Of a stretch of DNA of 64,000 nt, positions 36,755-60,230 are shown one piece after another. The stretch spans positions 62,001 through 126,000 of the IMG/VR virus record IMGVR_UViG_3300031951_021456; one strand, given 5' to 3'. The position numbers and the translations under genes are program-made. Under the pieces are notes generated by a model, which did not search any database, was not told where the DNA came from, and worked only from the letters and a program-made list of their open reading frames with translations. Each line of letters starts with the position of its first letter. The first letter of the stretch is position 1.

Positions 36755-37389
36755 ATGGCTCGCCTCTCTGAATTGTCTCCAGAAGAATTGTTTGAAAGTC
36801 ACCATATTTGTTTAAACAGGCCAAAAATTCAAGAAGGTCAGCTTACAATTCTTGCAGAAAAGCTCGCTGAAATTGAAGAAAATTTGGAAAAATTGGAAGC
36901 TTCAAAGGCATTAATTCGCTCAGAAGCTCTTAAATTAATGCAAGAACGTAAATCAGATAAACCATTTAATAGTCAGTATGGTAAATTTACAATATGTTCC
37001 GGCAAAAAAACAAAAGTTTTCACATGCCCTAAGGTGAAAAGAGCACAAACAACCCTAGACAATGCAAAAAGAAAAGCAACCGAAAATGGTCAATTTGAGA
37101 CTAAACAAGGAGATGATTCTCTTAGATTTGATTCTGTCCCTTTGAATTAATTAAACCACAACATTAGTTACCCAATAAAATGAAATTCACCGATTTGCGC
37201 CTTAAATTGACTTGGAAACAGCTCATTCTCCTGAGACTGGGGTTTTTATATTTTGGAATCGTGGGAAGTTTATTTCCAGCAAAAACATCTTTGATAATTT
37301 ATGAATGGTTTAGGGTTAATAAAGATGAGTTATATTTAAAAATTATGGCAATCTGTGATTATCTGAGCAGTCAAGATAAAAATTCATAA
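36755..37389 (+). other. Two hypothetical CDS (36755-37150; 37180-37389)
   Basis: ORF track; follow the class A promoter at 36671. Confidence 0.6.
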
Positions 37390-37464
37390 GAACTCCTTAT
37401 CATTCAAAGCTTGACAAACCATAATCTTACCACTATCATTAAAAGATCTTCAACACTTGAACTG

Positions 37465-38040
37465 ATGAATCTCAATCAAGCTGCTCAAAACATGGTTTCT
37501 TTCTGGGAAGATCCAAGGAACATTCCATTCAAGGGCCAATTAATCTCTTTAGATGGCGATACACCATGCATGTGTGCACAAGGCCAAACCCTCTTTAAAG
37601 AGGGCGATTATTCGGTTAATCAGCTAGAGATGATGCCTCAAGAAGTAGCAGATAAAGAAACTGCACGAATCTTAGGAATCTCAGTTTCTCATTCTAGGCT
37701 CTTGCGTAGAATTAATGATTCTTGTCCAGATGCTCCACAAGATGTTCTAACTAATCCAGAAAAATATCTAGGGCATAATTATGAAGCTGTACTGAAATTT
37801 TGGTATCTTTTGGATACTTTGAGTCGTGAAGATTTTGATATAGTTGATAAGCGTTGTTATGATATAGTTTCTGCTTTCTCAGCAGCTTATGCTATTATAG
37901 GCTCTGAGTATGCAAATGCAGCTTTTGATGCTGCCATTGGTCTTGTTGCAGGTTATGCAACTCTTGAACTCATCGGCTCACATAAACTTCAAGAACATGT
38001 TTTTCTTCCTATGTTCTCTTTTACTCAACTTCAGCCATGA
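37465..38040 (+). CDS. MKIS-family paralog 11 with N-terminal CMCAQGQ domain
   Basis: ATG 37465; DVLTNPEKYLG.NYEAVLKFW.LLDTL...ELIGSHKL. Confidence 0.85.
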   Translation: MNLNQAAQNMVSFWEDPRNIPFKGQLISLDGDTPCMCAQGQTLFKEGDYSVNQLEMMPQEVADKETARILGISVSHSRLLRRINDSCPDAPQDVLTNPEKYLGHNYEAVLKFWYLLDTLSREDFDIVDKRCYDIVSAFSAAYAIIGSEYANAAFDAAIGLVAGYATLELIGSHKLQEHVFLPMFSFTQLQP

Positions 38041-38198
38041 ATGAATACTATGACGATGAAGAGTTCCTTGAGGAACAAGAAGTCTCCGATGATGATGATG
38101 ATGATCGTTCAGATGATTACAGTCTAGAGGTTGATCCACCATCAGTTAGATCTGCATCACTGTTGCGTAGATCTTTGCCGATACCTAGGCTTTACTGA
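38037..38198 (+). CDS. 53-aa highly acidic protein (not in ORF track)
   Basis: MNEYYDDEEFLEEQEVSDDDDDDRSDDYSLEVD...; 18 of the first 33 residues are D/E; ATGA overlap. Confidence 0.55.
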   Translation: MNEYYDDEEFLEEQEVSDDDDDDRSDDYSLEVDPPSVRSASLLRRSLPIPRLY

Positions 38199-38274
38199 TA
38201 AGAACTCCTTATCATTCAAAGCTTGACAAGCTCCAAACAATCCACTATTCTGTATTTGTTGTTAAACAACTCCA

Positions 38275-40251: not shown

Positions 40252-41797
40252 ATGATCATGAAACTTAAAGATCTCATCAAAAATCTGAATAGCCCGTCAT
40301 TTCCATTTTATGGTGATGAGTTTCTTCAAGAATTTGGAATTCATGATTATGTTAATTTACATGATAATGGCTTCACTGAAACATATATAAAAGTCTGGTA
40401 TTGCACTGATACTTGGGTTGGGCTTAAAGTTATTTTACTTGATGATGAACCTATTTGCATTTCAAGACAAAATTGCAGAAAAGGTGATATTCACTATGAA
40501 TGGCTCAATGAAGAAAAATTTCTAAGAACCAAAAGGTTTGTTGAGTCTCTTATTGATGAGCCAGATAAAATGAATATAGCTTATGCAAATTTAGAAGAAG
40601 ATTTTGACTGTTGTTATAGTGTTGAATATACAGGCCAATTGATGGAGAACTTTCATTCAAAAGCCATTCATAATGATAAAAATGTTACGTTAGATTGGGT
40701 AAAAATAAGACAAGAAATACAAAATGATAGAATCACCAAAAATGTCTGGATTTTTAGTGAAGAAGGCCAGGCTTCAGTATGTTTGGATATTAGTGAACTA
40801 AAAATTCCAATTAACACAATTAACTGAAATGAAACAAACTTTCTGGACTTCAAATTCTAATGCTAAGGAAATTCAAGGTTTACTCAAAAAATATAAAACG
40901 ATAAGATTTCGGGCAAATCCTATAATTATTGGAGATAGAATTGAATTTTGTTTGGGGGGAGATGTTGAAGAATTTAATCAATTTAACCAAGATGTAGATC
41001 TAATTGAGGAGAAATTAAAGGAAATTGATAAGAAACCACTGGGATTTTTTGGACAGTTGAAAAACTGGCTCAAAAATGATTTCATCAGCTAAAATTTTTA
41101 GTAAGATTAAATAGCAACACTCAAACAAAAACTATGAAGCCAGTTTTAATCTATCTGTATGTTGCAGCAGCTTTGGGTACTGCAATTGGATTGGGTAATG
41201 CCTCACCTCAAACCTCTGCGAAACAATTAGCTGCTGTAAGTATTTTATGGCCAGTCTATCATGTAGCAGTTTACACCTATAAGACTGCCAAGGACTAATA
41301 AGAACTCCTTATCATTCAAAGCTTGACATTTTTTGAATACGGCGCCAAACTCAATTTATCCAAATGAACATGGCCAACAAATGACAAACCACTCTTCAGA
41401 AAAAAATCAACAGTGGCTGGAAATGGAACAGACACTACAAGATAATGGTGGTAGTCAGCGAGTTAAAAGTATTTTGAAATATGTTTTAATGAATTTGGGT
41501 TACAGTCACAGAAGAGATTCTGTGATTTATTATCCAATTTACAACAAATCAGAAGTTTACTTCAATGGTGTTCTTATTGCAACTATTGATAAAAGACATA
41601 AGGCTGTTATTCTACCAAAATATGAGGAAGTACACCGAACAAAACCCGTAAAAGAAATGGTGAATAGAATTTTGATGCGTTTTTGTGGTGTAAAACTATT
41701 TCAGAAGGATAAAGCATGGTCTATTGTTAAACCATATGAAGATAATATGAATTTGGTTGAATCCATTTCAGTTCCTTTTCATGAATTAGACTCATAA
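40252..41797 (+). other. Hypothetical CDS (40252-40827, 40829-41092, a short membrane ORF from 41134, about 41380-41797)
   Basis: ORF track plus manual reading. Confidence 0.6.
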
Positions 41798-41873
41798 GAT
41801 CTGCTAATGCCTCAGGTGCTTGACAAACCATAATTCTTCCCCTATCATTAAAAAGTCTTCAACCCTTGAGCAA

Positions 41874-42266
41874 ATGAATCTTGCAGAACGTCTTAAGCGC
41901 CATTCTGACTTTTGTTCCGGCCTACCTGGTGGCGTGCGGTTTGATGCTCCCGGCGAGGATCTCAACTGGGCCAACCTCAACTGCGCCAATCTCAGTGACG
42001 CCAATCTCAACTGCGCCACCGGCAACATGAGGGAAATTAAGACCTCTCAATTTGACCAATGGGGCATTACATGGACACGATCCCCGGAAGGTATTGATTA
42101 TCTTCAAATTGGATGTCAACGACATCAACTTGAAAAGTGGAAAAATGCGGATCCACGATGGATTACTGCAATGGATCCGGCAGCGCCTGAATGGTGGGAA
42201 AAATATGGTCAATTTACCATCCAAATGGTTGAGCTTTCACCGGCTGTTGCATGGGGGCACGACTGA
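41874..42266 (+). CDS. Short pentapeptide-repeat protein
   Basis: LNWANLNCANLSDANLNCA followed by LQIGCQRH..W. Confidence 0.75.
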   Translation: MNLAERLKRHSDFCSGLPGGVRFDAPGEDLNWANLNCANLSDANLNCATGNMREIKTSQFDQWGITWTRSPEGIDYLQIGCQRHQLEKWKNADPRWITAMDPAAPEWWEKYGQFTIQMVELSPAVAWGHD

Positions 42267-42326
42267 CGCCGCTTGACAAGCCCGCGTGAATCCCCTAGTA
42301 TCAATGAGCAACTAGGGGATTCCCCC

Positions 42327-43760
42327 ATGATCATTCTCAGCTCTGAACAGAAACTGGCAATTGAAGCCGCAAGAAGACAGAATAGTAATTTAATTATTGA
42401 AGCTGTCGCAGGAGCAGGAAAAACTTTCACACTAATTGAAATTCTCAAAATACTAGAGGGTTCAATTGCCTTTACAGCTTACAATAAAGATATTGCAACT
42501 GAAATATCCCAAAGAATTTCTCCACTGAATCTTGATAATGTAAATGTTGGTACAATACATTCAATGGGGTTTGGTTCTATTCGTAGAGCATTCAAAAATG
42601 TTAAGGTTGATGGAAATAAACTCAATAAATTAGCCAAAGAAGAGTTTAATGGAGAATATGAATATCTACGTGATATCGCAATAAAGGGTGCAGAATTGGC
42701 AAAACAAGTAATGCCAAAAACCTTTGAAGACTGGCATAAAATGTTTGATCATTATAATTTATGGGATATGGTTTCCGAAGATGCTGCAATTGATGCTGCT
42801 CAATATTTGTTAAATGTTTCAAATAGTGTTAAAAATGTTGTAGATTTTTCAGATATGATCTATATGCCAATTCAATTCAATTTAAGAATTTGGCAATATG
42901 ATGTGATTCTATTAGATGAAGCTCAAGATACAAACCGAGCAAGACGAGAATTGATAAAGAAAATGTTAAAGCCTAATGGCATTCTTATTGCTGTAGGTGA
43001 TCCTCATCAGGCGATTTATGGTTTCACTGGGGCTGACCACAATTCTTTAAACATAATCAAAGAAGAATTTAATTCAGAGGTTTTAAGGCTATCAACAACC
43101 TATAGATGCCCAAAGAAAATTGTAGAATATGCTCAAAAATGGGTAGGACATATTAAAGCACATGAATCTGCACCTGAAGGACTATTAGATTTCTGTAAAA
43201 TTACAGATATAAATCCTAATCCAAATGATGCAATAATTTGTAGAAATACTCGCCCCTTAATTGAAATTGCTTACAAACTATTAAGAGAAAATATCTCATG
43301 TAAAGTTGAAGGTAGAAAAATCGGTGAAGGGTTAATTAAATTAATTAATAAGTGGAAGAGTGTCAAAACTGTTTGTCAATTAGAACAAAAATTAGACGAA
43401 TGGGCCGAAAAAGAAATACAAAAAAATAAAGATAAAGAAAAATTCACAGTATGTCAAGATATTGAAGATAGAGTTCAAACAATTAAAGTTTTTATTGAGC
43501 AATGTGAAGAAACTGATGGAATTGCAATTTTAATTCAAAAAATAAAGTCTTTATTTGAAGATAATACTAGCGGTTGTGTTATTCTTTCTACAATTCATAA
43601 AGCAAAGGGAAGAGAATGGAATCACGTTTATGCATTAGGAATGAATAAGTATTCTCCAAGTAAATGGGCCAAAATGGAATGGGAAATTAAACAAGAAAAA
43701 AATCTTTGTTATGTCCAAGTTACTAGATCTAAACATCATCTTACTATTGTTGAAGCATAA
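42327..43760 (+). CDS. SF1 UvrD/Rep-like helicase
   Basis: AVAGAGKT, LDEAQD, VGDPHQAIYGF, TYRCP, STIHKAKGREW and YVQVTRSK; ATG 42327. Confidence 0.93.
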   Translation: MIILSSEQKLAIEAARRQNSNLIIEAVAGAGKTFTLIEILKILEGSIAFTAYNKDIATEISQRISPLNLDNVNVGTIHSMGFGSIRRAFKNVKVDGNKLNKLAKEEFNGEYEYLRDIAIKGAELAKQVMPKTFEDWHKMFDHYNLWDMVSEDAAIDAAQYLLNVSNSVKNVVDFSDMIYMPIQFNLRIWQYDVILLDEAQDTNRARRELIKKMLKPNGILIAVGDPHQAIYGFTGADHNSLNIIKEEFNSEVLRLSTTYRCPKKIVEYAQKWVGHIKAHESAPEGLLDFCKITDINPNPNDAIICRNTRPLIEIAYKLLRENISCKVEGRKIGEGLIKLINKWKSVKTVCQLEQKLDEWAEKEIQKNKDKEKFTVCQDIEDRVQTIKVFIEQCEETDGIAILIQKIKSLFEDNTSGCVILSTIHKAKGREWNHVYALGMNKYSPSKWAKMEWEIKQEKNLCYVQVTRSKHHLTIVEA

Positions 43761-45608
43761 GCAACACTGATCAATAAGAGCTTGACAGACCACACTCAAG
43801 CTCTTATAATGTTAAAGATGCCAACCTACCAATTCTACAATGTCTAATCTTTTCGCCTGGAATGAAACCATTCAAAATCTTTACCCAGTTCAACCAATTC
43901 CTACAGTTCAACAAATTCTAGATGAAACTTCTGTTGGTAATGGTTTCCATAAATTTGCAGTTGAAGGTGGATTTGTTCACCTCACCACTGAAGTTTTCCG
44001 TCTAGCACTAGAAGATGCTTATGATCCCACCATGAGGGATTGGCAATTATCTGTTAAATTATGGGTATCGGATAAGACGGCAGAAACAAATTATTGGGAA
44101 AGAAGGTTACACCAAGCACTTATGAATGCAAGTGATGCATTATCAGGTGTCCATCATATTTTCACACAAAGATTGAAACGTGGTGAATGTAAAATAGAAG
44201 CTCGAGATCTTGAGAATTTAATGGGTGATTATGAAGTTTCAGTTAAAATTCTACAAGACTATGCTAAATATATGGAAAATCTCGTTAAAGATAAGGTAGA
44301 AAAAATCATAAGCAACCCTTATCAATCAACTCCTTGACACTGCCAGCCCCTTGGCATATACTTAAAAGGTCACACAGAGGACTCCAACCATGATCCATGC
44401 ATTTTTAACCACGGGCGCGTGCATTAGTGGTCATATTGGTGACCTTAACTTTAGAAACAAATTAAGGAATGAATCGTCAAGCGTCACGGAGATTCAAGCT
44501 GATGAAGATGAACTAGCTAGAGCATGTTCATTATTGGGAAGAAATCTTCCGCCGGTAAGATTTTACCATTTTGTTGGGGTTAATGCCCAAGAAATTGCAG
44601 CAAATTGGTAGGAATAATAAATTGCTCAAAGAATTAGGAGTTTAATTCTCCTCCAAATAAACTTTCAGATGGTTTATTTGTTCTCGCTTAGTGTAATTGA
44701 GGTTCCTTATTTGGAACCTCTACCTGAGCACATTAGTTTATCATCAAGGAGCCACAATGACAACTGAAACATTTGAAATTCAAATTTTAGTTGACAATCA
44801 ATGGACTAATGATGCCTCTTATTTGGGGCATGGTTGTAAACAAAGCCTGAATAAATTTGATGGTTTAGACACAGCTCAATCAGCAATAGAAAGTTTGATT
44901 GCTGTTGGGTTTGATGGCTCAAAATTAAGAGTAACAAGCCCGTAATACCCATAAGCTTTACTAATCATTCCAACCACCAACTAATCATGAAGATCAGCCA
45001 AGAAGCAAAGATTGTCAGACATCCAATGTCCATTTTGACAATTGACAGGAAAAATGGTATTGAAACAAGGGTTATCAGTCAAATGCCACAAGGAATTTAT
45101 GTTAATGATCGCTTATATTCTTATGCTGAGGCGATCCGTAAAGTAAATCCACTTAATCAGTTACACTGGCCGTCAGATGTTCATACACATGTTCATATGA
45201 ATGCTGTAACTGCATTCCTAAAAACCTTTGAAGCTGCATGTCTTAAAAAAGATTACATCCTTAAAGAGATTATTGTTAATGGTAATGGGTATATCTTTAA
45301 TTTTGACTTGGAAAATCAATCACTCTAAATCATGGCGCTTTTCAGTTTTCTTATTTCTGCATACCCCTATGTATGTTTCATGGTGTTCGGATTTTTTGTA
45401 GGAATTTCAACCTCCAATTGTGAGAGAAACCCAACTATATTTGAGAAATTAGTGCTCATTTCAACTTCTGCAATTTTGGCAATTTTATGGCCAATTGTAT
45501 TAATTATATTTTTTTGGTTGGTTGATCCATAAGCAACACTGATCAATAAGAGCTTGACAGACCACCCTCAAGCTCTTATAGTAAGAAAGTCAACTTCAAC
45601 CACACAAG

Positions 45609-46028: not shown

Positions 46029-47287
46029 ATGGGGTTGATCCATAAGAAATCCTGATCAATGAGAGCTTGACAAACCACGCTCAAGCTCTTATAGTAAGAA
46101 AGTCAACCTCACTTGCACCATGGACAACAAGAGCATTCAAGTCGGTCGGTTGTGGACAGCTTCCCTAGCATGGAAAGATGCTGCAGAAGTATATTTAATT
46201 GCAGGAGATCTCAATAAGTATCGACACTGCAAGAAAGAACAGGCTGATCTTCTTTTGATGAGAGCAAAGATTCTTAAAGAGATTGCTGATGGAAATAATT
46301 CTCCTGATTATGTCTGGAAAGCTAAGATTTCCACATCAGCAGTGCAATTGCCCATAAGCAACACTGATCAATAAGAGCTTGACAGAATCTCAAAAATCCA
46401 TTAGTTTACCTTCATCCGCAACACTGATCATGAACAACAAGGAATTGTTTGAATCGCATTTGAACGAGGCATACATTGATTTATTTCAAAATGATGCAGA
46501 CTATTCTTATGCAGCAGCCAGAAAAACTCCTGCTGAATTGGCATCTTTAATGACAGTTTCTTTAGCCAGGGGTGAAGCCAATTTGGAAGGTGAGGGTATA
46601 ACAAGAGCCTGCAAAGCTGTAGGAATAAAGAAAACCCGTAAAGCAATTAAAGAATTTTTGAATAAGCCATAAAATCTAAAAGATAATTTTAGTCTTAACC
46701 CATTCAACACTCCAATGGAAAATCTTTTTGTCAACATCAACCGACGGTCTGATCCAGATTCACCTAAATGGGTTAGATTGAGTGAGATTCTTACATTTCA
46801 TGATACAATTTTCGGTGTTAGAGTAATTTGCAAGGGAGGACATAAGTTTACCGGAACATTGAAATCAAAATTTCTAATGCATGTAATTGCAAAAACTACA
46901 AATACTACATTGAATGATATTGACTATTCCATTTGATTAATGAAAATCATTAAATTAAGACATCTTTCGCAAAACTCACTCATGAATTATTCAATAGGGC
47001 ATTGGTATATGAAAGGTTGCCTTGCATGTTATAGAAATGCCTTTCTAAATGAAGAAATTTTTTATAACAAAGAGACTCTACTAATTTCTATTGAGAATGT
47101 GAAAAATTCTCGTAATAGTTATATTACAGAAGAGGCATATCAAACTGTTTTGAGACATTTTGAGGCTGGACTTCTTCTTTTTGAATGTCAAAATAAACCA
47201 TAAGCAACACTGATCATTCAATAGCTTGACAGCAGCTCAAAAACCCATTAACTTACTTTCATCCACATCAGGGAGGTTTCCCCGCTC

Positions 47288-47938
47288 ATGATTACTGAAT
47301 CTGAAGTCAATTCTGCGGTTTATACGCTTCTGCGGTCTAAGAATCTTGAGCATCTTAATGCTCATTCGGGGCTTATTGCCAGGATCAGGAGAGAATGGAA
47401 TTCTTTCAAGAAATCTGCAATAAGTCTAGGGTTTAACCCAGAAGAACACCGCTTAACTGCATACAATATTGCTGAAGGTGATCTATGGGATCATGCTGCA
47501 CATGACTGGATTTTAACTAGAGAAGGTTGTGGGTGTGGTTTCTGGGATGGTGATTGGGAAAAGAATATGGGAGAAAAGCTAACCGAATTGTCCAAGACTT
47601 TCGGGGAGTTGGATGTATATTCTGAACGGGGCTATGTTTATAGCGAGTTCCCATGTAATATCAATAAGATTGCAACTTATTGTTTTATTAAATATAAAAA
47701 CTTCAGCCAACGCGGGGCCAGCCTCATTCAATTCCCACAGAAAAACGCAACTTCATATCTGGTTAAATTACCTGAGATTGATAAACACTGGAGAAGGATT
47801 AACTGTAGATGTGTATCTATAGATGGTGGGTTTGAATTTATAGATTGGTGTCATGTGAAGGGAGAAAAAATTTGTCTAGGGAATATATTAGGTAGAATTT
47901 ATGTACCTGTAGATGATGTTGTTAAAGTTGAACTATAA
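47288..47938 (+). CDS. Two-domain hypothetical protein, paralog of 50279
   Basis: Shares SEVN.A, REW.SFK.SA..GF.PE.HR, AHDWI, INKIATYCF.KY and KLPEID..WRRI with 50279. Confidence 0.75.
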   Translation: MITESEVNSAVYTLLRSKNLEHLNAHSGLIARIRREWNSFKKSAISLGFNPEEHRLTAYNIAEGDLWDHAAHDWILTREGCGCGFWDGDWEKNMGEKLTELSKTFGELDVYSERGYVYSEFPCNINKIATYCFIKYKNFSQRGASLIQFPQKNATSYLVKLPEIDKHWRRINCRCVSIDGGFEFIDWCHVKGEKICLGNILGRIYVPVDDVVKVEL

Positions 47939-49616
47939 TGGATTCTAATCAATGGAGGCTTGACAGCGAGAGATAAACCCCTTACAGTAACAGAGTAATC
48001 CACCACACTCAAAACAATGTCAACAAAAAGAGAGCTTCAAAGTGAAATTGAAAGTTTGAAAAGAGACATAGATTGCATAACCAATAGAATTAAAGAAAGA
48101 GAAGAAGAATTATCTAAGTATTCAGCACCAGATCGCATTAGAGATGCTGATGTTGGTGAAACATTGGCAGATGGTTGTGTATTGATAGATTTTCTACGTG
48201 GCAAAGACCGAGCATGGGCAATTCTAGGCGCACCCGTAGAAACCATTCAGTACACTACGCTTAAAGATATGGATAAAATTAAAAAAGAATTATCATTAGG
48301 CCCAGAATGGTTTCTACCTACACACCAAATTGCTAAAAGTATTTGCATTGATCCTTGCCATTTTGAACTTCTCCCGGTGGGTGAGTATTGGACATCTATT
48401 TCTGAGAATGAATATATTCTCATTGCGGAGAATAACGCGCTTGTATTTGCCACCTTAAGATACGCGAATAACAACAATCTTTCTAGACTGGCTTGGTATT
48501 GTAAGATTGTTGAGTTTAGTGTGCATCCATCATACGATTATTTACCTTATTGATCTATAAGAACGACTTATCAATAAAAGCTTGACAAGCCATAATTCTT
48601 CCCCTATCATTAAAAAGTCTTCAACACTTGAATCAATGACTGATCAAACTGCTCGCCAGCGTGCAATCCATGCAGCTAACATGCAATGGGCTGCACACCT
48701 AAAGCGAACCGCTCAAAAAGCTGCTCAAGATGCAGATAAAGCTTCTCTAGCAGCCTCTCAAGCACATGACCGAGTAAACACTCTTCGTGCAGCATTAGCG
48801 GCTGCTCATGCTAATCTTCAAAGTTCAATAGCAGCAGCCATCACAACACAAGATATTTCAAATAATGCTAAGCTAAATGCCATAGATGCTCGTACAGATT
48901 ACCATACTTTTATGGATAGTATCAAATAATTGTATCATGAAAAACGGTTCATATTGGTCGGATAAAAGAGACATTCCAAGCGGAAAATATGGTAAGACTA
49001 AGCTGCCTGACTGTGAATGTACTGGTATATTTACATGTAGAGTCTGTTTAGATTATAGTATTATTAGGGACAAAATCTTTCCAAACTCATGAAAAGTTTT
49101 CACCAACAACTGGCAACATTCAAAGCTCTTGACAAACAAAAAAGAGAGAATCCTTTTCGTAAGGAATGGATAAATTCACAGTCTCTCCATTATACAGAAA
49201 GATGGAAAAAAGAAGCTGATATTATTAAAAGGTATGTTGAATTATCACGAGGAAAGTTTCCTGATTTTGTTCTAGAGAATTTTTATTGCTTAAAATATAT
49301 GATAACAGGGGAAGCTTTTAATCTTGGCTGGGGTTTTGAATGTAATAATGTAATTTATTGGAAAGATACAAAAAGAGAGATAATGGCTGAATGGATGGAT
49401 AGATATAATCACACATGCGATTATCTAGGACCAATTAAAAGAGTAACCATGCTGGAAAGTATGCTGTATAATAGATTCAATTTTATAGGGCCAATTGAAC
49501 GAAAAATCTTGCATGAAAGTATGCGGAGTGACTCATATGGAATTCTAATGCCTCAAGGTCTTGACAAAAGCACTTGAGACATTCTAGTATAAACAAGTAA
49601 TCCACAGAGGGTTCCC

Positions 49617-52600
49617 ATGGCTCCTATTCACTTCCACCGCGACAATAATTTGAAAGAAGTAATTGTTGCAACAAATAAAATCAATAAAGTATGTAATATT
49701 ATTCAACCGCAGATCATAGAAACTTTAAGACCTTTCAGGGGCAAAAAAATAATTAAGGTAACTCCTTATCGTACTCTAACGAGTAAAGTTTTTGAAGTTC
49801 TCAATCCAGTTTTAGAAGAATACCGAAAAACAATGGGAGGTATGTATATCTTGGATTATCAATCTAATTATAGTCTGTCTTTGAAAGTTCAGGTGCCGTA
49901 TAAATTGCATTATGATGATGGGGGGTTTCAAGGCAGTTTGTCTCATTTTCTTTATTTGGGTTTTTTGGAAAACAGTACTTACCTTAAGGACGAAGATCTA
50001 AAGTTATGTAAGAGTAAGGAAGATTATGATTTTGATGAAATTAAGTTGAAAATGGTGCAGCTTAAACAGTTGGAAGAACAATTTGATGCATTAAAGAGTG
50101 AATTATCGCGCTTCTTGCGATAAGGAATAGACCATATTACTCCCCGGTTTGCTAGTCTTACTGGGGATTTTTTGTGTTTAATGTTTTAATGTGACACTTT
50201 AAGAACTGGCACATTCTTAACCACCTTTCCGCCCTTACCTGCTGTAGGATAAACAAGCAAACAAAGGGAGGTTCCCCCGTGACTACACAATCTGAAGTTA
50301 ATGCTGCAATTGCAGCATTGTATATTTCCGATGAATTTGATGATAAAAAGGTTACTAAATCTCTAAACTCTCGTATAAAAAGAGAATGGTTATCATTCAA
50401 AGCTTCTGCTATAAATATAGGTTTTGACCCTGAAAAACATAGAACATTTACGCTAGATAAATCTAAAGAAGACTTATGGGGTTATGTTGCACATGACTGG
50501 ATAATGATTCGTAATTTGGGATTTTTAGACGGCCATTGGCAAAAAGATAAGGCAGAGAAATTAGCAGAAATTGCAAAATCTTTTGGCCGGTTGGAAGTAT
50601 TTCAACAGGGTGATTATATCTTTCCACGTTCAGATGAGTATATCAATAAGATTGCAACTTACTGCTTTCTTAAGTATAAAGAAGTGTCACACTCACATTT
50701 GAATAAAGATGGTTATGGTAAGACTTCATCGCCATATATGATTAAGTTACCCGAGATTGATAATCAATGGAGGAGAATATATTCTTTATGCTATTCTAAT
50801 ACATCAACCGAAATCATTACAATAAAAGGTGAAACATTATTATTGGGGAATCTATTATCGGATTTTTGTATAGCAGTTGGAGATACAGTTAAGATTAATT
50901 TGTAGGTATAACAAGCTCTCATAAGAGATGCTAATGCCTTAAGGGTTGACAGATCCCCTTAAGACATTCTAGTATAAACAAGTAATCCACAGAGGTTTTT
51001 ATGCACTCCCAACATCCAGCAATTATTGAATGTTTGAATAGTTTCAATTTTGAAAATGTTCACAAAATAATGGTACTTCTAGATTGGAAATATGCTATGC
51101 CTGCACCACCATATTATGCTGAGGTTCCTAATATAGAACGGCTGAAGGAATGCGCAGAATATCTATTGCGTCTATCTGTGCAGCATAGATGTGATTGGAG
51201 TAGTGGTGGATTTGAAGCGAAATATATTGTCGGGTGGGATGGTTTTGTTAAGCTTCGCTTATGCTTCGTGGCAGTTGATTGTCAGGTGAATTGTAAAGAA
51301 TAAGCTAGTCTTACTGGGGATTTTTTGTGCTTAATGTTTTAATGTGACACTTTAAGAACTGGCACAGTCTAGAGAACCATCCAGCCCTTAGCTGCTTTAT
51401 GATATGGAGGTATTCATCCAGGTATTTCATGGCTACGCCAGCATTCAAAACAAAAAAAGGTGACCTTACAGCTTATGCCTTGGCTTGTGGATATATTGAA
51501 AAGGTGGAAATTGGAGATGATATAATAGTTCTGCAAGCTTTGGATTGCCCTAATGTATATCTCGTTTCGTTGTGGGAAGGTAAATATAATTCCCATGATA
51601 AAGATTATCGCTTGCTAACTGATGCACGAAGAGAGTTTAAGAAGCTCGTCTCTATGAAAAAACGTGCTGACACTTTAAGAACTGGCACGTTCTCAACCAC
51701 CTTTCCGCCCTTAGCTGCTGTATGATGACAAGGTAAACAAAGGGAGGTTCCCACCATGCCCATCACAATCTATGAATTCGGTGAATTGTCAGATGAAGCA
51801 AAAAGCATTGCATTAAATACCTTTCGTTATATCAATGTTGACTGTAACTGGCATGAAACTGTATGCGAAGATGCAGAAGTAATCGGATTAAAGATTACAG
51901 AATTTGATATTGATAGAAATACCATAAAGGGACATTTGAAACAAGATTTTTTGGATGTATGTAGGCTAATAAGAAAAAATCACGGTAAAGATACGGAAAC
52001 AAGAGACACCGCCAAAAAGTATCTTAAAGAATATATTGCAGAATACTATCGTTATAGGGGCAATGATACACAAAATTTACCAGATTTGCTGAAAGGCTTC
52101 CAATGTGAAGATGAAGCAAAGGATATAGAGATAGATTTTGCCCTCGCACTTTTGGAGGATTATTTCATCATGTTGAGAAGAGAATATGAATATCTCACAT
52201 CTGATGAAGCAGTTAAAGAATCAATTGAATTAAATGAGATGAAATTTCTAGAGAATGGTAATGTGACATAAGCAGTGCTTATCAATAAAGGCTTGACAAT
52301 CCATATTCTTACCTGTAGTATTCTTTCATCCACATCAGGGAGGTTCCCACTATGTCTCAAATTCGTCTCACCGGCCTTGATCTATTGAAGCATCATAAAA
52401 GTCAACATGAAACAAGGCACTTAAAGGTGATGTTTGCTGGATATATTAAAGATGGATTTAAGCCATCATATACAGAATACTATTCAGCATTACTTCCACT
52501 AATGTTATGGAATAAAAAGTATGAAAATACAATGAACAATGGAGGTTCTAAAATTGTTCAAAGTCTAGTGACACATCTGGTGGCGGGTGCAGATTATCAG

Positions 52601-54743
52601 AAAGAAAATGATCGGGTGTGTTATTTGAGTAATGGTGATGCTGCTATTTACTATTATGGGCAGTTAATATGCATTGTAAATTTTAATAATAATTATATAA
52701 CGATTCAGCCCAATTTAATGAGAACAAAATCCACAAAAGAACGTTTGAATAGAATTTTGATGAAATTCACTGGATGTCAACTATTTCAAAAAGAAAAGAA
52801 GTGGTATGTTTATGATCCAGAAAGAGATCAAGATAGTTTAGTGCCTGAGGGAGCTTGCTTCAGAGTAGATTTTATCGGCTCCTGTCCAGAATAGGACATA
52901 AGAGATACTAATGCCTTAAGTGATTGACAGATCCCCTTAAGGCATTCTAAGATAATCAAGTAAACCAAGGGAGGTTCCCCAATCATGGCTCAAACTTTCA
53001 ACAATTGGTCTGAAGTTCCTGCATCAATTGAAGCAAAGATCCGAAAAATTTGGAATGGTGACGGAGCTTCAACATACGAAAAAAGTCATGATGAAAACGG
53101 TGAAGAAATTACAGTCTATAAATTATCAGACTACAAAGTGATTTTCAATACTGATTTTTTGACCGATGCTCAGAAAATTAAATTCTTTGAGTTGGCATGG
53201 ACCTATAGATTAAATCTTGCAGACTTTCTGCATAATTTAACATTTGAACCTGAATGTGTAAGGATATATGATGAAGTATATCATATCCCCGGAATTGTTG
53301 TAGGAACCTGGCCACATTGCAACCTATATGGTGGGATGGATGAAAACGGACATATTCATACTCAATTATGGTTCAGCTTTCTTAAATCTTATCAGAGCTA
53401 AAAACATGTAGGCCTATAAGAGATACTAATACCTTAAGGTCTTGACAAAAGCCCTTAAGGTATTTTAGTATAATCAAGTAAACACATCAGGGAGGTTCCC
53501 ACCATGATTGATTCTTTATATCAAGATGGAGAGATTAGATTTTTGAGGCATTTTTCTACAAGAGGAGGTAGATATATTTCAAATAGGCTAAATCTAAAGG
53601 GAAAAAATGCAGAAAAAATTAGCAATAGTCTGTCAGGTTTCTTCTGGAATTTACATGCTGCAATTGTGGTTAAAAATTTGAATGAAATGAAAGCCAATAA
53701 AATTACTAATCCATATGTAAATGGCTGCAAAATGATATATGAAGAAATTCTTGAGAATCCGCAATATATGTTTCTTCCAAAATGGGTTAAGGACGATTTA
53801 GTTATTGCTGGTAAATTTTTGAGTTACGAAAAATAAGACAATCTTCCATCTCTAGGGTGACACTTTAAGAACCGGCACACCCTAGAGAACCTTCTGGCCC
53901 TTAGCTGCTGTAAAATAAGCAAGTAAACCACAAGGGAGGTTCCTTTGACTGCAACAATCTATCAACAATTACTTGAGCACTCTAAAGGTTTAATAGAGAT
54001 TCATGAAACTGATTTAACCATTCACGATCAAAACAGAATAAAGACATTTGAGCCAGGTTCAAAATGGTTATGGGTTTGTTATCAGTGTGGAACATATTTA
54101 ACAAAATGGGAGAGTAAATTCACATCAGAACTTTTATATTATATCGTGGAGAGGAATGGCTGTCCAGATTGCAAAGTCTTCATCATTGAATGTAATGAAG
54201 AATTAAATGGAAATGTTATAGAGAAACAAGCAGCAGAATTGTGGATTCAAAAGAAATATGAGAATTCCTTATCAATAAAGGCTTGACAAACCATACTCTT
54301 ACCTGTAGTATTCTTTCACTCACATCAGAGAGGTTCTCATGTTTTTAGGTAAACATCAAAAAGGTCTCATTACTTATCTCGTAAAACGGAAAAATTACAC
54401 TGGCATTTGTGGCCAAGATATGAGAGATGTTCTTAATAGGCTAGTAAAAAGAGGTATAATTAAGTATAAAAAAATTGAGTATAATTATGGAACATATGAA
54501 TATGAAGTAACATTAACTATTCCAGATATTCATTACATTACATCTGAAGAAGCTAATAATATGAATAGTTTTCAGCGATATAAAGAGCTTAGGGGTGAAC
54601 CTTATAGAGAAGGATTCTTTTTTATTACAAACCCACAATTACTTTCTAATAAGACACATTATTCACGACAACATGAAGAATTTGGACCATTCTCTAGTAT
54701 AGAAGAAGCTGTTGTATTTTATGCAAGTAATAGAAAATTTTAA
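49617..54743 (+). other. Cassette array of hypothetical CDS (49617, 50279, 51001, 51429, 51756, 52352, 52985, 53504, 53945, 54339)
   Basis: Each has its own promoter, most with a GGGAGGTTCC ribosome-binding leader. Confidence 0.7.
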
Positions 54744-54765
54744 TAAAATGTGTTTTTAATCGTTT

Positions 54766-55055: not shown

Positions 55056-58000
55056 ATGGCCACCCACAACATTTTTCCAGCCTACAAAGGGCTAGTTAAA
55101 GTGTCCAAACTGCGCAAAAAGATTGGCCAACAAAGATATACAATCTCAGCAAAAATCACCCCAGACTTTACATTTGAAACAATAATTCCAGCATATAACA
55201 GAGAGGATGCAATTTTCCGTGCTACAGCATACTTTCCAAATGGAAGATTCGTCAAAGTGAATAACAAATGAGACTGTGACACTTTAAGAACTGGCATGTT
55301 CTCAACCACCTTTCCGCCTTTAGCTGTAGGATATGGAGGCAAACAAAGGGAGGTTTCCCGTGAAATTGATCAGTAATCACGAGGATAACATTAAAAGGGA
55401 GCTTTATACAATTGAAAATAATGGGGATAAATTTACACTCATTTGGTATGTTAATCCAACTACAAAAACAATTATTGATGTTGAACTGAGAGATGCATCC
55501 GGGGTATCTGTTTTTGATCCTGCCTTACTTGAGGAGATTGAAACCTTTGTAGTTGATACACTTATTGAACGTCAATCTTAAGATAAGCATTTCTTATCAT
55601 AGACTCTAGAGTGCTCAAAGTGTGCTAGAGTCTTAACTATAAATCAAGGGAGGTTCCCGCAATGGCTAAAGAAACCACATCACAGATTGTTTCAAAGTAT
55701 AAGTGTCTCATTGTAAACATTTTAGCAGGAGCTAAAATAACCAAACCGACGGGTCTTGAGCTTATGGGGCAATTGAGTAATTTGTGGTCAGATGAAGAAT
55801 TTAGCAGCTTGTCATTATATGCAAAGGAAGAACTATTTGAATACTCAGACAATAAAAGGATACAGCTTACTGATGAATATACAGTATCACTTTACACTGA
55901 TGATAATGGCAATAAAAGTATATCAAACAAAACCGAATTTGCATGTGAGCCATCCATTTATTGGTATGAAGTCAAAGAGATATGCTCAAATGATGGAACA
56001 ATGGTAATAATCAAAACACCTACAGATAAAGTATATCTTGAGTAAGTCTTATAGGTATATTAAGCTCTCATAAGAGATGCTAATGCCTTAAGTGATTGAC
56101 AGATCCCCTTAAGGCATTCTAGTATAGTCAAGTAAACCAAAGGGAGGTTCCCCATGGCTAAAGAAAGTTTCAGGGAAAAGATCATCGGCTTGGCTATAGG
56201 TTGTGATTATACACATGATGACTCCTGCGCAACATGGGAATCAATAGCACGGGAGCTGATTGCTCAGATGAGCGAACAAGATTGCCAGGATTTCTATGAT
56301 TATTTCATGGACAATTGCATGTAACTGATAAGCTCCAATCTTTCCACCAACACCGCTTTTTTCACCATGGCTAATTTGATTGATTCTGGAATTGACTACG
56401 GAATGGGACGGACTAATGTTGATATGGATAATGGGATCCGTTACGGCTTCATTCCCGCTAATGATCTTGCATCCCACGCATGGGATACTATCATGAACGA
56501 CGGTGAAGATTTAGACTATACGGAAGCAATTGAAAATTTGAAAGATGAATTAGCTAGAACGATAAAAAGCACAGTGGAAGACTATGATCCCCGTTTCGAC
56601 TGCAAACAAGCAGCAGAGGATATAGTGGATGCAATGGAATTTATTCTAGAGTCTAGCGGAGATTGCACAAGGTACAAATACGAAAATAAAGGGTTGGAAT
56701 TTTCTACGTTATCCGATGGCGATTTAGTAGTGATAAAATCCCCGTACTTTACCTACTGCGGCCACTGTTCCCCTTGCGCGCCTGGTGGAGGTTATCTTAA
56801 GTCTGGGGGATCTGTAAAGACCTACTGTCTTGGACCGGAATGGTTTGACGAGAATTCCCCTATACCCTACGTTTGCTATAGAGTGTCAGACGGATCCCCC
56901 TTGTCTCCTCATGACTACTTGCATCCACAAGACGGGCTAGTTTTAACTGTTTCAATAGAACCTTAAAAGAATAAAGGAAATAAGGCAACCAAAATCTATT
57001 AAGAGACTTCAATAAGCGATGGAATAATTCTAGTATTTGATTGCAGATACTCTGCTCATTATATCAATCCTTGTGGCTTTTAGGTATATCAGGCTCCCAT
57101 AAGGTATTCTTATCATTCAAAGCTTGACAAGCCATAATTTTAGTCTTATTGTTCCTTTGTTCACTCATTCAGGTTTCAATCATGCGCAAAATTGAAGAAA
57201 AGATGATTGATGCAATCAATTATCGCAAAAATTGGTCTTGCGATAACACAATGGTTGAGATTTTTGATAATGAAATTATCGTCAAATTACATTTTCACCC
57301 CATCGCTAGAATTAATAAAAATAGCATTAAACTTTCATCGTTTGGTTATGAAACAAGAACCACAAAATCTAGACTTAATGCTATTCTTAGTCACTTTGGT
57401 AAAGAAAGAATCTATCAGCAAGATTTTGTTTGGTATATAAATAATGAACTTTTTATTGATGGAATGTCTATATCATTGGTTTAATCTTATGAGAGCTTGA
57501 TATACCTTAAGACATTAGAAAATCTTATAGGTATATCAAGCTCTCATAAGGTATTCTTATCATTCAAAGCTTGACAATATCCCTTCAGACACTCTAAGAT
57601 AAACAAGTAAACAAAAAGGAGGTTCCTTTGAGCACTGAGCTAGAACGAATCCAAAAAGAAAAATTCAAAGAATGCCTTAAAGGTCTTCCAGAATTTATTA
57701 TGTCTGGAGCAACCTATGAGCAGTGCTTGCTTAAAGTTTTGGAAGAATGTGATTGGTGTTTCTACACTCAAGAAGAAGATAATTTAGTTAAATCTATTCA
57801 CTCTTACTTCTCCAAACCATGAGACTACCATCCATCAAGACAATCTCATCAAATTTTCCAGATCTTTCAAAGGAAGATGTAAAGAAAGTTAGACAATTAC
57901 TTGAGAAGTATTACTATAGACCTATCGTATGTTTGCAAAAAATAAACAAGGTAATTGAAGGCCACGGCCTTGAGTATATTGCAGATGTGGAAGATGATGG

Positions 58001-59667
58001 AATAAATTTTAATGGCGTGGAATATGTCAATATGGGTGATAGTTATGCTTCAACAATTTGCTATGATCGTAGTAGTGGGAGAATGTTTATATCATGCTGG
58101 GAAGATGTAGTCGTGAAAAATCTTAAGCGCTTCGGAGGCCCATAAGATCTTTTAATGTCTCAAGGGTTGACAGGAGATAATTTTAGTCTTATTGTTCCTT
58201 TGTTCATTCATTTTTCATCATGAATCTTTCACAAGGAGAAATTAAAATTATTCTTGAATCCCATTGTAGGCGCTATCTTGATATGTTAAATCAAGAAGAA
58301 CTTTATAGTTATGCACTTAATTCTATGATGAATTCTTATGAGAAAAATCCAGGCTACTCTGACACTGATCTAAACCTTTTAGTTCGTGATATATTTAAGC
58401 TTGAAGGAAATGATGTCGATTCTGTATCAGAATTCTTAACCGGTTGCGGGATCTCCGATGATAATGTGGATCAGTTAATAGTAGATAGTCTTATTGATAG
58501 TTAAGAGGTTTATCAAGCTCTCATAAGATCTTCTAATGCCCTTAAGGGTTGACAGATGCCTTGAGACACTCTAAGATAAACAAGTAAACAAAAAGGAGGT
58601 TCCTTTGGACTATTCAACAGCCTACAATCATCATGAAAGACTGTTGGGTGTTATGGATGGTTTGTATATGAATGCCCGCTTAACAAAAACGAGACACCAT
58701 AAATTGCGGAAAGATGTTAAACTATATGTTTGGGAGGATGAAGGCCTTAAAAGGTGCCCACAATGGGTTAAAATAAGTTTAGTGCAACATTGTGAACATT
58801 TATCCAAAAATATAAGCGAATGGCAAAGATGGGCATATAAGGGATCGGATGGTAAATTGTATCTTTCATATACTGATCTTAGCAAAGATGATCAGAATAA
58901 AGTAGATTTAGGAGAGATTGAAGGTCACCATTATTGGCTTGAGGAAACGAATAAAGATATAATTGTGCGGGGCGATGATGGGATTTTAACTATAACAAAG
59001 ACTAGGAGATTGACAGAATTCTATTATTGATTAGTTGCATTCTCTCCCCGGTTTGCTAGTCTTACCGGGGATTTTTTGTGCTTGAATGTTTTAATGTGAC
59101 ACTTTGAGAACCGGCGTCTCTCCAACCACCCTTAGCTGCTGTAGGATATGGAGGTAAACAAAGGGAGGTTCCCATGGCTAAAGAAAGTTTCCCAGACTAT
59201 AAAAGACACGTCACACTTCAACACCGAAGAATAAACTCAAGCGGTTATGATCGTTATGGTGTTTACTATGGCATCGGGCAACGACTTTACTATATTGCCG
59301 CCTTATCTGAAGATGGCATGGATTATATTTATCAAGATGAGTTTCGGGCAATTGATAGACAGGATGCAATCAATCAAGCCAGGGATATATTCCCAAATGG
59401 AAAGTTTACTGGTGCTAAAAAATGAAAAGATATAATTATAGATGGCCTCAACAGTTAGTATTTGGTCACTTAAATGCAGGTGAATTCTTTAGCTTTGCTG
59501 GAGACAGTGTAGTCTATCAAAAATTAAGCACTTTAATGTTTGTTGAAGTGGAAGCTAGAGTGATTGGACAAAAGATAATGGCAAAAATTAAACCTAATGC
59601 AACTGCAAAAAGAGTGAAGAGTTTACAGTTACCTGTTACAGATTGCATGAATTCTTTATTTCCATAA
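55056..59667 (+). other. Cassette array of hypothetical CDS (55056, 55360, 55662, 56154-56324 not in track, 56367, about 57182, 57628, 57819, 58220, 58605, 59174, 59422)
   Basis: Promoter/RBS cassettes in front of most ORFs. Confidence 0.7.
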
Positions 59668-59744
59668 GATCTTCTAATGCCCTTAAGGGTTGACAGATGC
59701 CTTAAAGCAATCTAGTATGAACAAGTAAACCAAGGGAGGTTCCT

Positions 59745-60230
59745 TTGACCACTAATTATTTTCAAGGTCTCAACAATGTTGCTGAGATTAAATCTCAGTA
59801 TAGAGAATTGGCTAGAAAGTTTCATCCTGATCTTGGAGGTTGTCTTGAAACTATGAAGACAATAAATTTACAGTATCATAACGCGCTGAAAGGTGAAAAC
59901 AATAAAGAATACGATGGACATACTTACAAATATAATAGCAAAACAGAACAGGATATAATGGACAAAATTAATGAGCTTCTGAAGCTAAATGATATACAGA
60001 TTGATCTCATAGGACTTTGGGTATGGATTCGTGGGGAAACTAAACCACATAAAGATAAGCTTAAAGAAATGGGTTGTTACTGGCATAGTAAGCGTGTCTG
60101 CTGGTATTGGAAGCCTAAAGGTTATTCAGGTTCCCGTAGAACTAATCCGGGGAGTTTGGATGAATTAGCTAGAAAGTATGGAGCGCAAACTTTTAATAGT
60201 ATGGGAACAAAAAGACTCGCAGCAGTGTAA
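59745..60230 (+). CDS. J-domain (DnaJ-like) protein
   Basis: IKSQYRELARKFHPDLGG...MKTINLQY; TTG start after a strong SD. Confidence 0.85.
   Translation: MTTNYFQGLNNVAEIKSQYRELARKFHPDLGGCLETMKTINLQYHNALKGENNKEYDGHTYKYNSKTEQDIMDKINELLKLNDIQIDLIGLWVWIRGETKPHKDKLKEMGCYWHSKRVCWYWKPKGYSGSRRTNPGSLDELARKYGAQTFNSMGTKRLAAV

What the first reader, a model, noticed from the sequence alone, without database searches (positions are those of the whole stretch)
37386..59750. Gene-cassette array with mosaic promoters that swap halves at TTGACA
Seen: 26 co-oriented sigma70 promoters, roughly one per gene. The same right half (a(a/g)ccataat..ctatcattaaaa) follows three different left halves (37411, 41820, 48582). 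57124 has the left half of 57571 but the right half of 58167, and 46379 has the left half of 43782/45554 with a new right half. Upstream genes often end in the cassette's caTAAg or tTGAca (37389, 39608, 43760, 44337, 47203, 52271, 54286, 59667). Established: PeSL promoter cassettes mediate modular shuffling in T4-type phages. Inference: an integrase-free cassette system in which short promoter homologies add, delete and reorder host-takeover genes.
Basis: partly seen in the sequence, partly recalled or inferred. Interest (0 to 1): 0.68.

Follow-up and report, generated by a model that had tools for sequence, protein, structure and literature searches.

The report
Shuffling promoter cassettes in a cyanophage
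A 22-kb stretch of a large freshwater T4-like cyanophage carries 26 near-consensus host-type promoters built from interchangeable halves. Related phages show genes gained, lost and reordered at these promoters, much like the 'PeSL' cassettes already described in T4-like coliphages and vibriophages.

Summary
Window 37.4-59.8 kb holds 25 plus-strand TTGACA-N17/18-TAnnnT promoters, against about 0.5 expected, plus one degenerate copy. All share one grammar: an ATAAG box, CTnATC, the -35, the -10, a GGAGG ribosome site and an ATG. Left and right halves occur in all combinations.

The genome is a 248-kb T4-like cyanomyovirus from lake metagenomes. It has no integrase or resolvase but does have a RecA/UvsX-like gene. 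The array genes are almost all ORFans.

This fits the published PeSL cassette of T4-like phages, so I file it as a new member of a known kind, in a cyanophage lineage.

- A 92%-identical strain differs by five events. Three have junctions inside regulatory cassettes and two are illegitimate, with an end inside a gene.
- A more distant 244-kb relative has the middle of the array reshuffled.
- Over 165 related loci, synteny breakpoints are about 6-fold enriched at cassettes. They peak at the cassette edges (ATAAG/stop codon, start codon). TTGACA is only a minor junction.

"Host takeover" and excised circles remain untested.

The parts
37384..37440 (+). sigma70-type cassette, -35 at 37411; left type L4, right type R10; upstream stop TAA inside the ATAAG box
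   Evidence: in strain L068 the core from -9 to the ATG is replaced by the 39605 type
38196..38252 (+). cassette, -35 at 38223; L4 / R4
   Evidence: 96% identical in L068
39578..39634 (+). cassette, -35 at 39605; L4 variant / R9; upstream gene ends in the TGA of TTGACA
41296..41352 (+). cassette, -35 at 41323; L4 left half but no credible -10 (degenerate right half)
   Evidence: right end of the 1.5-kb indel J1 lies 28 nt upstream
41793..41849 (+). cassette, -35 at 41820; L1 / R10 (mosaic, no hairpin); drives the pentapeptide-repeat gene
42246..42302 (+). promoter of the UvrD-like helicase, -35 at 42273; lacks the ATAAG box
   Evidence: left end of replacement J2 lies 14 nt upstream
43755..43811 (+). 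cassette, -35 at 43782; L3 / R11; 10-12 bp hairpin overlapping the -35
   Evidence: MFE -17.4, z -3.8
44307..44363 (+). cassette, -35 at 44334; L4-like / R6; upstream gene ends in the TGA of TTGACA
45527..45583 (+). cassette, -35 at 45554; L3 / R11; hairpin
   Evidence: z -4.1
46040..46096 (+). cassette, -35 at 46067; L3 / R11; hairpin
   Evidence: z -3.4
46352..46408 (+). cassette, -35 at 46379; L3 / R3 (mosaic)
47199..47255 (+). cassette, -35 at 47226; L3 / R3
47933..47989 (+). cassette, -35 at 47960; L2 / R7; box variant ATAAT
48555..48611 (+). cassette, -35 at 48582; L3-like / R10 (mosaic)
49534..49591 (+). cassette, -35 at 49561; L1 / R8; hairpin with compensatory changes relative to 50946 and 53442
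50919..50976 (+). cassette, -35 at 50946; L1 / R8; hairpin with the -35 in the loop
   Evidence: z -3.6
52266..52322 (+). cassette, -35 at 52293; L2 / R2; homology to strain L068 stops within 20 nt after TTGACA (J4)
52897..52954 (+). cassette, -35 at 52924; L1 / R8; 11-bp perfect hairpin
53415..53472 (+). cassette, -35 at 53442; L1 / R8; 12-bp perfect hairpin
   Evidence: (z -5.0)
54256..54312 (+). cassette, -35 at 54283; L2 / R2; upstream gene ends in the TGA of TTGACA
56069..56126 (+). cassette, -35 at 56096; L1 / R8; 11-bp hairpin
   Evidence: (z -5.8)
57097..57153 (+). cassette, -35 at 57124; L4 / R1 (mosaic)
57544..57601 (+). cassette, -35 at 57571; L4 / R8 (mosaic)
58140..58196 (+). cassette, -35 at 58167; L1 / R1 (mosaic)
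58522..58579 (+). cassette, -35 at 58549; L1 / R8
59663..59720 (+). cassette, -35 at 59690; L1 / R8; last of the array
50142..50278 (+). E2 cassette: intrinsic terminator (50142-50166 plus T run), 22-nt core at 50192, extended -10, GGGAGG site
51304..51398 (+). E2 cassette, core at 51345; left partner of the E2 x E2 indel that removes gene 51399-51725 in strain L068 (J3)
51668..51755 (+). E2 cassette, core at 51668; right partner of J3
53858..53944 (+). E2 cassette, core at 53858
55277..55332 (+). E2 cassette, core at 55277
59046..59173 (+). E2 cassette with terminator 59046-59070, core at 59097
60232..60631 (+). E2 cassette (core at 60302) followed by an E2 remnant (terminator 60572-60596); marks the downstream end of the plus-strand array
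35937..36512 (+). HNH endonuclease gene just upstream of the array (context; no shown role)

Best explanation
This is the hyperplastic small-gene region of a roughly 248-kb freshwater T4-like cyanomyovirus. About 50 co-oriented, mostly ORFan genes are expressed from two families of repeated intergenic cassettes.

Family 1 has 26 copies. It is a near-consensus host sigma70/SigA promoter with a conserved upstream box (ATAAG-N5-CTnATC, about -61 to -45) that often holds the stop codon of the preceding gene. A variable spacer, a -10, a short leader, a GGAGG site and the start codon follow. In about a third of copies an inverted repeat brackets or overlaps the -35.

Family 2 (E2, 7-8 copies) is an intrinsic terminator plus a 22-nt conserved core about 30 nt upstream of an extended -10.

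The cassettes are dispersed direct repeats of 60-130 nt. I infer that the phage's general recombination and replication machinery recombines them: homologous exchange and gene conversion between like copies, and microhomology or template switching between unlike ones. Exchanges that stay in register leave a working promoter and survive. This deletes, duplicates, replaces and reorders promoter-plus-gene units and leaves chimeric cassettes. No site-specific recombinase is involved. This is the PeSL mechanism of Arbiol et al. 2010 in a new phage lineage.

Shown here: the anatomy, the mosaicism, the conservation, the strain differences and the breakpoint enrichment. Inferred: promoter activity, timing of expression and the enzymology of exchange.
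For: - Anatomy and excess over chance: (25 sites against 0.47 expected). Confinement to one 22-kb region on one strand.
- Mosaicism: left types L4, L1 and L3 all occur with right type R10, and L4 and L1 each occur with R1 and R8, so all four combinations exist.
- The genes behind similar cassettes are unrelated; only eight weak-to-moderate paralog pairs occur among 54 ORFs. Tandem duplication of whole units therefore does not explain the repeats.
- Hairpins occur only in matched halves and show compensatory changes, while mosaics lack them, as expected for recombinants. Across 117 non-redundant cassettes, own arms pair better than swapped arms: stems of 6 bp or more in 26% against 9%, p = 2e-5.
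- The 92% strain L068 differs by five events:
  - a promoter-core swap at 37411, with borders at -9 and the ATG;
  - an E2 x E2 crossover removing gene 51399-51725;
  - a switch of right half plus downstream gene within 20 nt after TTGACA at 52293;
  - two further events that each have one end abutting a cassette.
- The 244-kb relative uses the same grammar with its own mosaics, and its mid-array gene order is scrambled.
- Of 304 synteny breakpoints in related loci, 22.4% lie within -35..+65 of a cassette, against 3.5% for random positions.
- The genome has no integrase or resolvase and has a RecA/UvsX-like gene.
- The assembly is sound: five independent assemblies are 99.9-100% identical over 1.6-20 kb.
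- The PeSL description matches: upstream stop codon, -35/-10, stem-loop that may overlap the -35, SD and ATG, ORFan-rich hyperplastic regions.
Against: - No transcription data. No RNA run holds the stretch, so promoter and terminator activity are untested.
- The hairpins here lack a U tract, and 18 of 26 copies have no clear hairpin.
- Unlike halves share little beyond TTGACA, too little for classical homologous recombination, so chimeras need microhomology events plus selection.
- The main breakpoint peaks sit at the stop and start codons. That pattern would also arise if breakpoints occur anywhere and only those between genes survive.
- Two of five strain-level events have an end inside a gene.
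- The J4 junction sits at a contig end next to a duplicated gene and could be an assembly join.
- Breakpoint counts are not phylogenetically independent.
- Read-level joints were confounded by paralogous cassettes.
Confidence: 0.7

Rival explanations
1. The cassettes are simply strongly selected regulatory modules: an upstream factor or UP-like box, a consensus promoter and a translation leader. They play no active part in recombination. Rearrangements arise by illegitimate recombination anywhere. Only those falling between genes survive, so junctions appear at cassette edges. Mosaic halves reflect occasional gene conversion without gene movement.
For: - The largest breakpoint peaks are exactly at the upstream stop codon (-30..-21) and the start codon (+50..+59), not inside the repeats.
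- J1 uses a 7-nt microhomology unrelated to the promoter, and J2 ends inside a gene.
- The left box and the E2 core are conserved in well over 100 unrelated contexts, which shows functional constraint.
- Orthologous cassettes in L068 are 93-96% identical while paralogous ones stay distinct, so there is no strong concerted evolution.
Against: - J3 is a clean crossover inside the shared 22-nt E2 core.
- Two junctions lie within cassettes: the 37411 core swap starts at -9, and J4 falls within 20 nt after TTGACA.
- The -19..+12 interval is still about 4-fold enriched.
- Published experiments on equivalent cassettes show recombination between them.
Confidence: 0.22
2. The conserved boxes are recognition sites of a dedicated DNA-binding nuclease or recombinase that actively mobilises promoter-plus-gene units, giving a site-specific cassette system. 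The boxes are the palindromic ATAAG-N5-CTTAT and the 22-nt E2 core. Candidates are the HNH enzyme at 35937-36512 or an unknown protein.
For: - Both boxes are extremely conserved in otherwise unrelated flanks.
- The commonest junction is at the ATAAG box.
- An HNH gene lies at the head of the array, both here and in the two relatives.
Against: - Both boxes sit at a fixed distance upstream of a -10, at about -64 to -43. That is what a transcription-factor or UP-type element predicts and is not needed for a recombination site.
- No integrase or resolvase is present.
- Junctions occur at several other positions.
- Nothing links the HNH gene to the boxes.
Confidence: 0.06
3. The mosaic order is an artefact of metagenome assembly across 60-100-nt repeats.
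For: The repeats are long enough to confuse short-read assemblers. One relative's contig ends in a duplicated gene.
Against: Five assemblies from JGI, ENA and Logan samples give the same sequence, 99.9-100% identical over 1.6-20 kb. The 244-kb relative was assembled identically in two projects.
Confidence: 0.02

Closest known systems
PeSL (promoter-early stem-loop) cassettes of T4-like phages RB49/phi1, T4/PST and KVP40/nt-1 (Arbiol et al. 2010, PMC2839356; Comeau et al. 2014, PMC4122927)
   Same: - Dense arrays sit in hyperplastic, ORFan-rich regions of a T4-like genome.
- The layout is the same: upstream stop codon, upstream region, consensus sigma70 -35/-10, a stem-loop that may overlap the -35, SD and ATG.
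- Indels and replacements between close relatives have junctions in the motif.
- No dedicated recombinase is involved.
   Different: - The host group and lineage differ: a freshwater Kyanoviridae-like phage. The only cyanophage examined for PeSLs in the held literature, S-PM2, was reported to lack dense arrays.
- The upstream region is a specific conserved box rather than a generic AT-rich tract.
- Only about a third of copies have a clear stem, and the stems are not GGGG..CCCC in this genome, though they are in many relatives.
- A second, non-sigma70-looking cassette class shares the array.
- Promoter, terminator and mini-circle activities are not demonstrated here.
Integron gene cassettes (attC sites and IntI integrase)
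   Same: Both are co-oriented arrays of single promoter-less or short genes bounded by imperfect palindromic repeats, with units gained, lost and reordered.
   Different: There is no integrase. Each unit carries its own promoter. Junctions are not confined to one core site. The resemblance is an analogy only.
Early and middle promoters of T4-like cyanophages (Syn9, P-TIM40; Doron et al. 2016, recalled from memory, paper not held)
   Same: Small-gene cluster upstream of the baseplate genes. Host-like sigma70 promoters and a separate non-canonical conserved element both occur. The E2 core resembles a bipartite motif in the Syn9 cluster.
   Different: Syn9 has only one match to the ATAAG..TTGAC grammar. 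As I recall that work, host-like promoters drove middle genes, not early ones. If that holds here, the array would not be 'early/host takeover'.

Membership tests
PeSL cassettes | Consensus sigma70-type -35 and -10 hexamers with 16-18 nt spacing, repeated many times | tested here: met
   25 sites with perfect TTGACA and TAnnnT at 17-18 nt, against 0.47 expected
PeSL cassettes | A stable stem-loop within or next to the promoter (between the boxes, overlapping the -35 or -10, or flanking them) | tested here: inconclusive
   Met for 8 of 26 copies (43782, 45554, 46067, 49561, 50946, 52924, 53442, 56096): z -2.2 to -5.8 with compensatory changes. The other 18, including all mosaics, have no clear stem. 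In 117 related cassettes, own arms pair better than swapped arms.
PeSL cassettes | Intergenic unit running from the upstream gene's stop codon to the SD and start codon of the next gene | tested here: met
   The stop lies in the ATAAG box or in TTGACA in at least 14 of 26 copies. The start codon lies at +50 to +62 behind GGAGG.
PeSL cassettes | Concentrated in hyperplastic regions of non-essential ORFan genes of a T4-like genome | tested here: met
   23 of 24 genome-wide copies lie in 9% of the genome. 27 of the 31 array proteins scanned have no Pfam match over a family's cut-off. T4-like cyanophage identity.
PeSL cassettes | Insertions, deletions and replacements between close relatives with junctions in the cassettes | tested here: met
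   Three of five differences from the 92% strain have junctions inside cassettes. Breakpoints are 6-fold enriched over 165 loci. Two events are illegitimate.
PeSL cassettes | Demonstrated strong promoter activity and terminator/attenuator activity | not testable with these tools
   No RNA run holds the stretch. The hairpins here lack a U tract; the canonical terminators belong to the E2 class.
PeSL cassettes | Mini-circles formed by exchange between neighbouring cassettes | tested here: inconclusive
   Only Logan contigs were available. 'Goes back' joints (53456 to 50964, 52978 to 51309) can be explained by paralogous cassettes outside the laid stretch.
Integron | IntI-type tyrosine recombinase next to the array | tested here: not met
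   No PF00589 or PF00239 match in the 248-kb genome, while the control genomes do match.

The most novel reading that the evidence does not exclude
Two upstream boxes are each held at about -64 to -43 and conserved in well over 100 otherwise unrelated phage contexts: ATAAG-N5-CTnATC and the 22-nt TGACACTTTRAGRACYGGCAC. They could be operators of dedicated phage or host DNA-binding proteins that also direct DNA breakage or strand exchange. Promoter-plus-gene units would then be actively mobilised between co-infecting cyanophages, making a targeted, integrase-free cassette exchange system rather than a passive by-product of general recombination.
Probability: 0.08. Interest if true: 0.8.

Novelty: new member of a known kind. 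Interest (0 to 1): 0.5.

Why it matters
- Lineage: it extends PeSL-type modular shuffling from enterobacterial and Vibrio T4-like phages to a widespread freshwater and estuarine cyanophage lineage. The one earlier look, at S-PM2, found no dense arrays.
- Grammar: it gives an explicit, searchable pattern for these cassettes. More than 120 metagenome contigs were hit before the scan stopped.
- Junctions: exchange occurs at every module border, not at one core site.
- Experimental leads: two sharply conserved upstream boxes point to unknown regulators of cyanophage transcription. For metagenomics, these repeats are both likely assembly break points and markers of the accessory-gene region where phage strains differ most.

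Tried and rejected
- Close relatives in GenBank phages: none by megablast or blastn.
- Nearest isolates: B3 and B23 are only 56% identical in UvrD and lack the array.
- IMG/VR protein-anchored scans gave only distant loci.
- The JGI metagenome scan with the L068 protein found nothing.
- Exact-protein look-ups of window genes returned only the same strain, so they show stability of one clone, not of the lineage.
- The L068 strain could not be extended beyond its contig end. No relative at 70-99% was found for gene 56367.
- Reads: all holders are Logan contigs and none is RNA. Most joints can be explained by cassettes or E2 copies lying outside the 5.35-kb stretch, for example 49561, 37411, 59690 and 50151. 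I give them no weight. The exception is a weak hint that a roughly 92% strain carries a different leader in front of gene 54339.
- Tandem duplication of promoter-plus-gene units is rejected as the source of the repeats, because the genes are unrelated.
- Intrinsic terminator role for the -35 hairpins in this genome: not supported, since no U tract follows.
- Rfam and tRNA scans of the window found nothing.
- The Syn9 transcriptome paper is not held, so the temporal class of either cassette family could not be checked against it.
- An RNAalifold run on the hairpins was dropped because arm positions vary. An own-arm against swapped-arm test was used instead.
Full report
**Identity of the sequence.** The window is bases 62001-126000 of a 247,932-bp virus record with 33% G+C.
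- A 932-aa fibre protein matches 465 phage records, almost all Synechococcus or Prochlorococcus myoviruses.
- The UvrD-like helicase inside the flagged region is closest, among isolates, to Synechococcus phages B3 and B23 of the Kyanoviridae, at 56%.
- The runs that hold the stretch are freshwater or lake metagenomes.
- The genome has no tyrosine or serine recombinase but has a RecA/UvsX-like gene.
- So this is a large lytic-type T4-like cyanophage from lakes.

**The observation.** In 37386-59750 there are 25 plus-strand matches to TTGACA-N17/18-TAnnnT. A Markov simulation gives 0.47 +/- 0.65, and the minus strand has 2. A 26th site (41323) has the -35 and left half but no -10.
- All copies share one grammar: cATAAG, five bases, CT(t/a/g)AT(c), 9-10 bases, TTGACA, a spacer, the -10, about 25 bases of leader, GGAGG, and a start codon at +50 to +62.
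- Genome-wide, 23 of 24 copies of the grammar lie here, all on one strand.
- Clustering of the halves gives four left types and about twelve right types, in many combinations:

| Left type | Right types found with it |
|---|---|
| L4 | R10, R4, R9, R12, R6, R1, R8 |
| L1 | R10, R8 (seven times), R1 |
| L3 | R11, R3, R10 |

The 'new' right half of 46379 is shared with 47226.
- The density is lower than one per gene: 21 of these promoters serve 38 called genes between 42.3 and 60.2 kb.

- Hairpins: in the matched combinations L3/R11 and L1/R8, an inverted repeat of 8-13 bp brackets or overlaps the -35 hexamer (z down to -5.8). Members differ by compensatory changes, and the mosaic copies have no such stem.
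- A second cassette family: seven further intergenic gaps carry E2. It consists of a canonical terminator hairpin with a T run, a 22-nt core (TGACACTTTAAGAACYGGCAC), 31 bases, an extended -10 and a GGGAGG site. Together the two families precede 27 of the 38 genes.
- Gene content: the genes are nearly all ORFans. Exceptions are UvrD, a cREC_REC domain, pentapeptide repeats and three Kyano_Gp96 paralogs. Few are paralogous, so the repeated promoters are not by-products of tandem gene duplication.

**The assembly is trustworthy.** Five assemblies from different samples and pipelines give the same sequence, 99.9-100% identical over 1.6-20 kb.

**Comparison with a 92%-identical strain** (L068, an ENA lake metagenome scaffold). 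Over window 33.6-52.3 kb there are five structural differences.

| Event | What differs | Junctions |
|---|---|---|
| J0 | At cassette 37411 both flanking genes are orthologous, but the promoter core is of the 39605 type. The two tandem paralogs behind these cassettes are a patchwork. | -9 to the ATG |
| J1 | 39779-41295 is absent. | A 7-nt microhomology; left end inside a gene, right end 28 nt upstream of the -35 of 41323 |
| J2 | 42260-48851 (14 genes) is replaced by 182 nt. | One end 14 nt before the -35 of 42273, the other inside a gene |
| J3 | Gene 51399-51725 is absent. | Crossover inside the shared E2 core |
| J4 | After gene 51756-52271 the left half is orthologous. The right half and the next gene differ. 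| Homology stops within 20 nt after TTGACA |

For J4 the contig ends in a duplicated gene, so an assembly join cannot be excluded.

**A more distant relative.** This is a 243.6-kb genome with UvrD 82% identical, assembled identically in two projects.
- It uses the same grammar with its own left and right types and its own mosaics.
- Both ends of its array are syntenic with the window, but the middle is scrambled. In window coordinates (kb) the order reads 42.3, 41.8, 48.0, 45.6, 40.3, 40.3, 55.1, 51.8, 53.0, 49.6, 47.3, 52.4.
- Many genes are unique to one phage.

**The wider family.**
- B3, Syn9 and the relative L003 lack the dense grammar.
- S-CREM1 has five copies, and several IMG/VR contigs have short arrays.
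The left half is therefore a conserved functional element.
- Many of these copies have GGGG..CCCC-type stems around the -35, as in published PeSLs.
- Own arms pair better than arms swapped between cassettes: stems of 6 bp or more in 26% against 9%, p = 2e-5.
- The E2 core occurs exactly in 34 IMG/VR contigs with unrelated flanks, always about 30 nt upstream of a -10-like hexamer.

**Where synteny breaks.** Alignments of 400 nt or more were compared between 165 related loci. Ends with no collinear continuation within 500 nt gave 304 breakpoints.
- 22.4% lie within -35..+65 of a cassette, against 3.5% for random positions in the same loci.
- The peaks are at -30..-21 (22 breakpoints; ATAAG box and stop codon), +50..+59 (14; start codon) and -10..+9 (12; the -35).
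- Individual sharp examples exist for each class.
- These counts are not phylogenetically independent. Edge peaks would also arise from selection against breaks inside genes.

**Interpretation.** The anatomy matches the published definition of PeSLs. Those cassettes were shown experimentally to be strong promoters, attenuators and sites of exchange that form mini-circles.
- In the held literature PeSLs are reported only for enterobacterial and Vibrio T4-like phages. The cyanophage S-PM2 was said to lack dense arrays.
- I therefore file this as a new member of a known kind.
Illegitimate events also contribute.
- The 'host takeover' label is unsupported. From memory of Doron et al. 2016 (not held), host-like promoters drive middle genes in Syn9 and a separate conserved element drives early genes. 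The E2 core resembles a motif in the Syn9 small-gene cluster, so E2 rather than the sigma70 cassettes may be the early class. This is a lead, not a result.

**Reads.** Only Logan contigs were available and none is RNA. I laid 5,351 bases, within the operators' limit. Most joints can be explained by paralogous cassettes outside the stretch, so I draw no conclusion on circles or deletion variants.

Noticed in passing
window 50142-60631 (cores at 50192, 51345, 51668, 53858, 55277, 59097, 60302): A second repeated intergenic cassette (E2): intrinsic terminator, exact 22-nt core TGACACTTTAAGAACYGGCAC, extended -10 and a strong RBS. The core occurs exactly in 34 IMG/VR contigs with unrelated flanks. 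It resembles a bipartite motif in the small-gene cluster of Syn9 and may be a distinct, activator-dependent promoter class.
   Followed up: partly
window 54766-54930: A tandem repeat of 47-56 nt, about 2-3 copies, in a 312-nt gap. Each unit holds a Fur-box-like palindrome (TTGATAATCATTCTCAA).
   Followed up: no
window 10172-11320: A phage-encoded class I tyrosyl-tRNA synthetase (PF00579, E 4e-67, with an S4 domain). No tRNA gene lies anywhere in the 64-kb window.
   Followed up: no
L067 (IMG/VR contig 3300044616_001697) 10.6-14.5 kb: Six copies of a related cassette (GATCAG..CTTAT..TTGACA..TAGAAT) lie on the strand opposite to the ORFs between them. This suggests antisense or non-coding transcripts.
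   Followed up: no
window 37459-38040 and 39655-40251; L068 3700-4420: Two tandem paralogs (68% aa) show alternating blocks of higher identity to one or the other copy between strains. This indicates gene conversion that also carried the promoter core.
   Followed up: partly
window 38785-39162: A small protein with a cREC_REC (cyclic-phosphate processing receiver) domain, E 1e-25, inside the array. It is also present in the 92% strain.
   Followed up: no
window 60232-60631: Two E2 terminator copies, 99% identical over 79 nt and 321 nt apart. The second lacks a promoter and gene, and looks like an emptied cassette at the end of the array.
   Followed up: no
whole record G000: IMG/VR labels the 248-kb record 'provirus'. 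However, it has no integrase or resolvase and has the layout of a lytic T4-like phage.
   Followed up: partly
window 41959-42018; L068 6800-7000: The pentapeptide-repeat gene differs between strains by repeat-number changes (130 aa against 178 aa). It lies on the other side of UvrD in the 244-kb relative.
   Followed up: no
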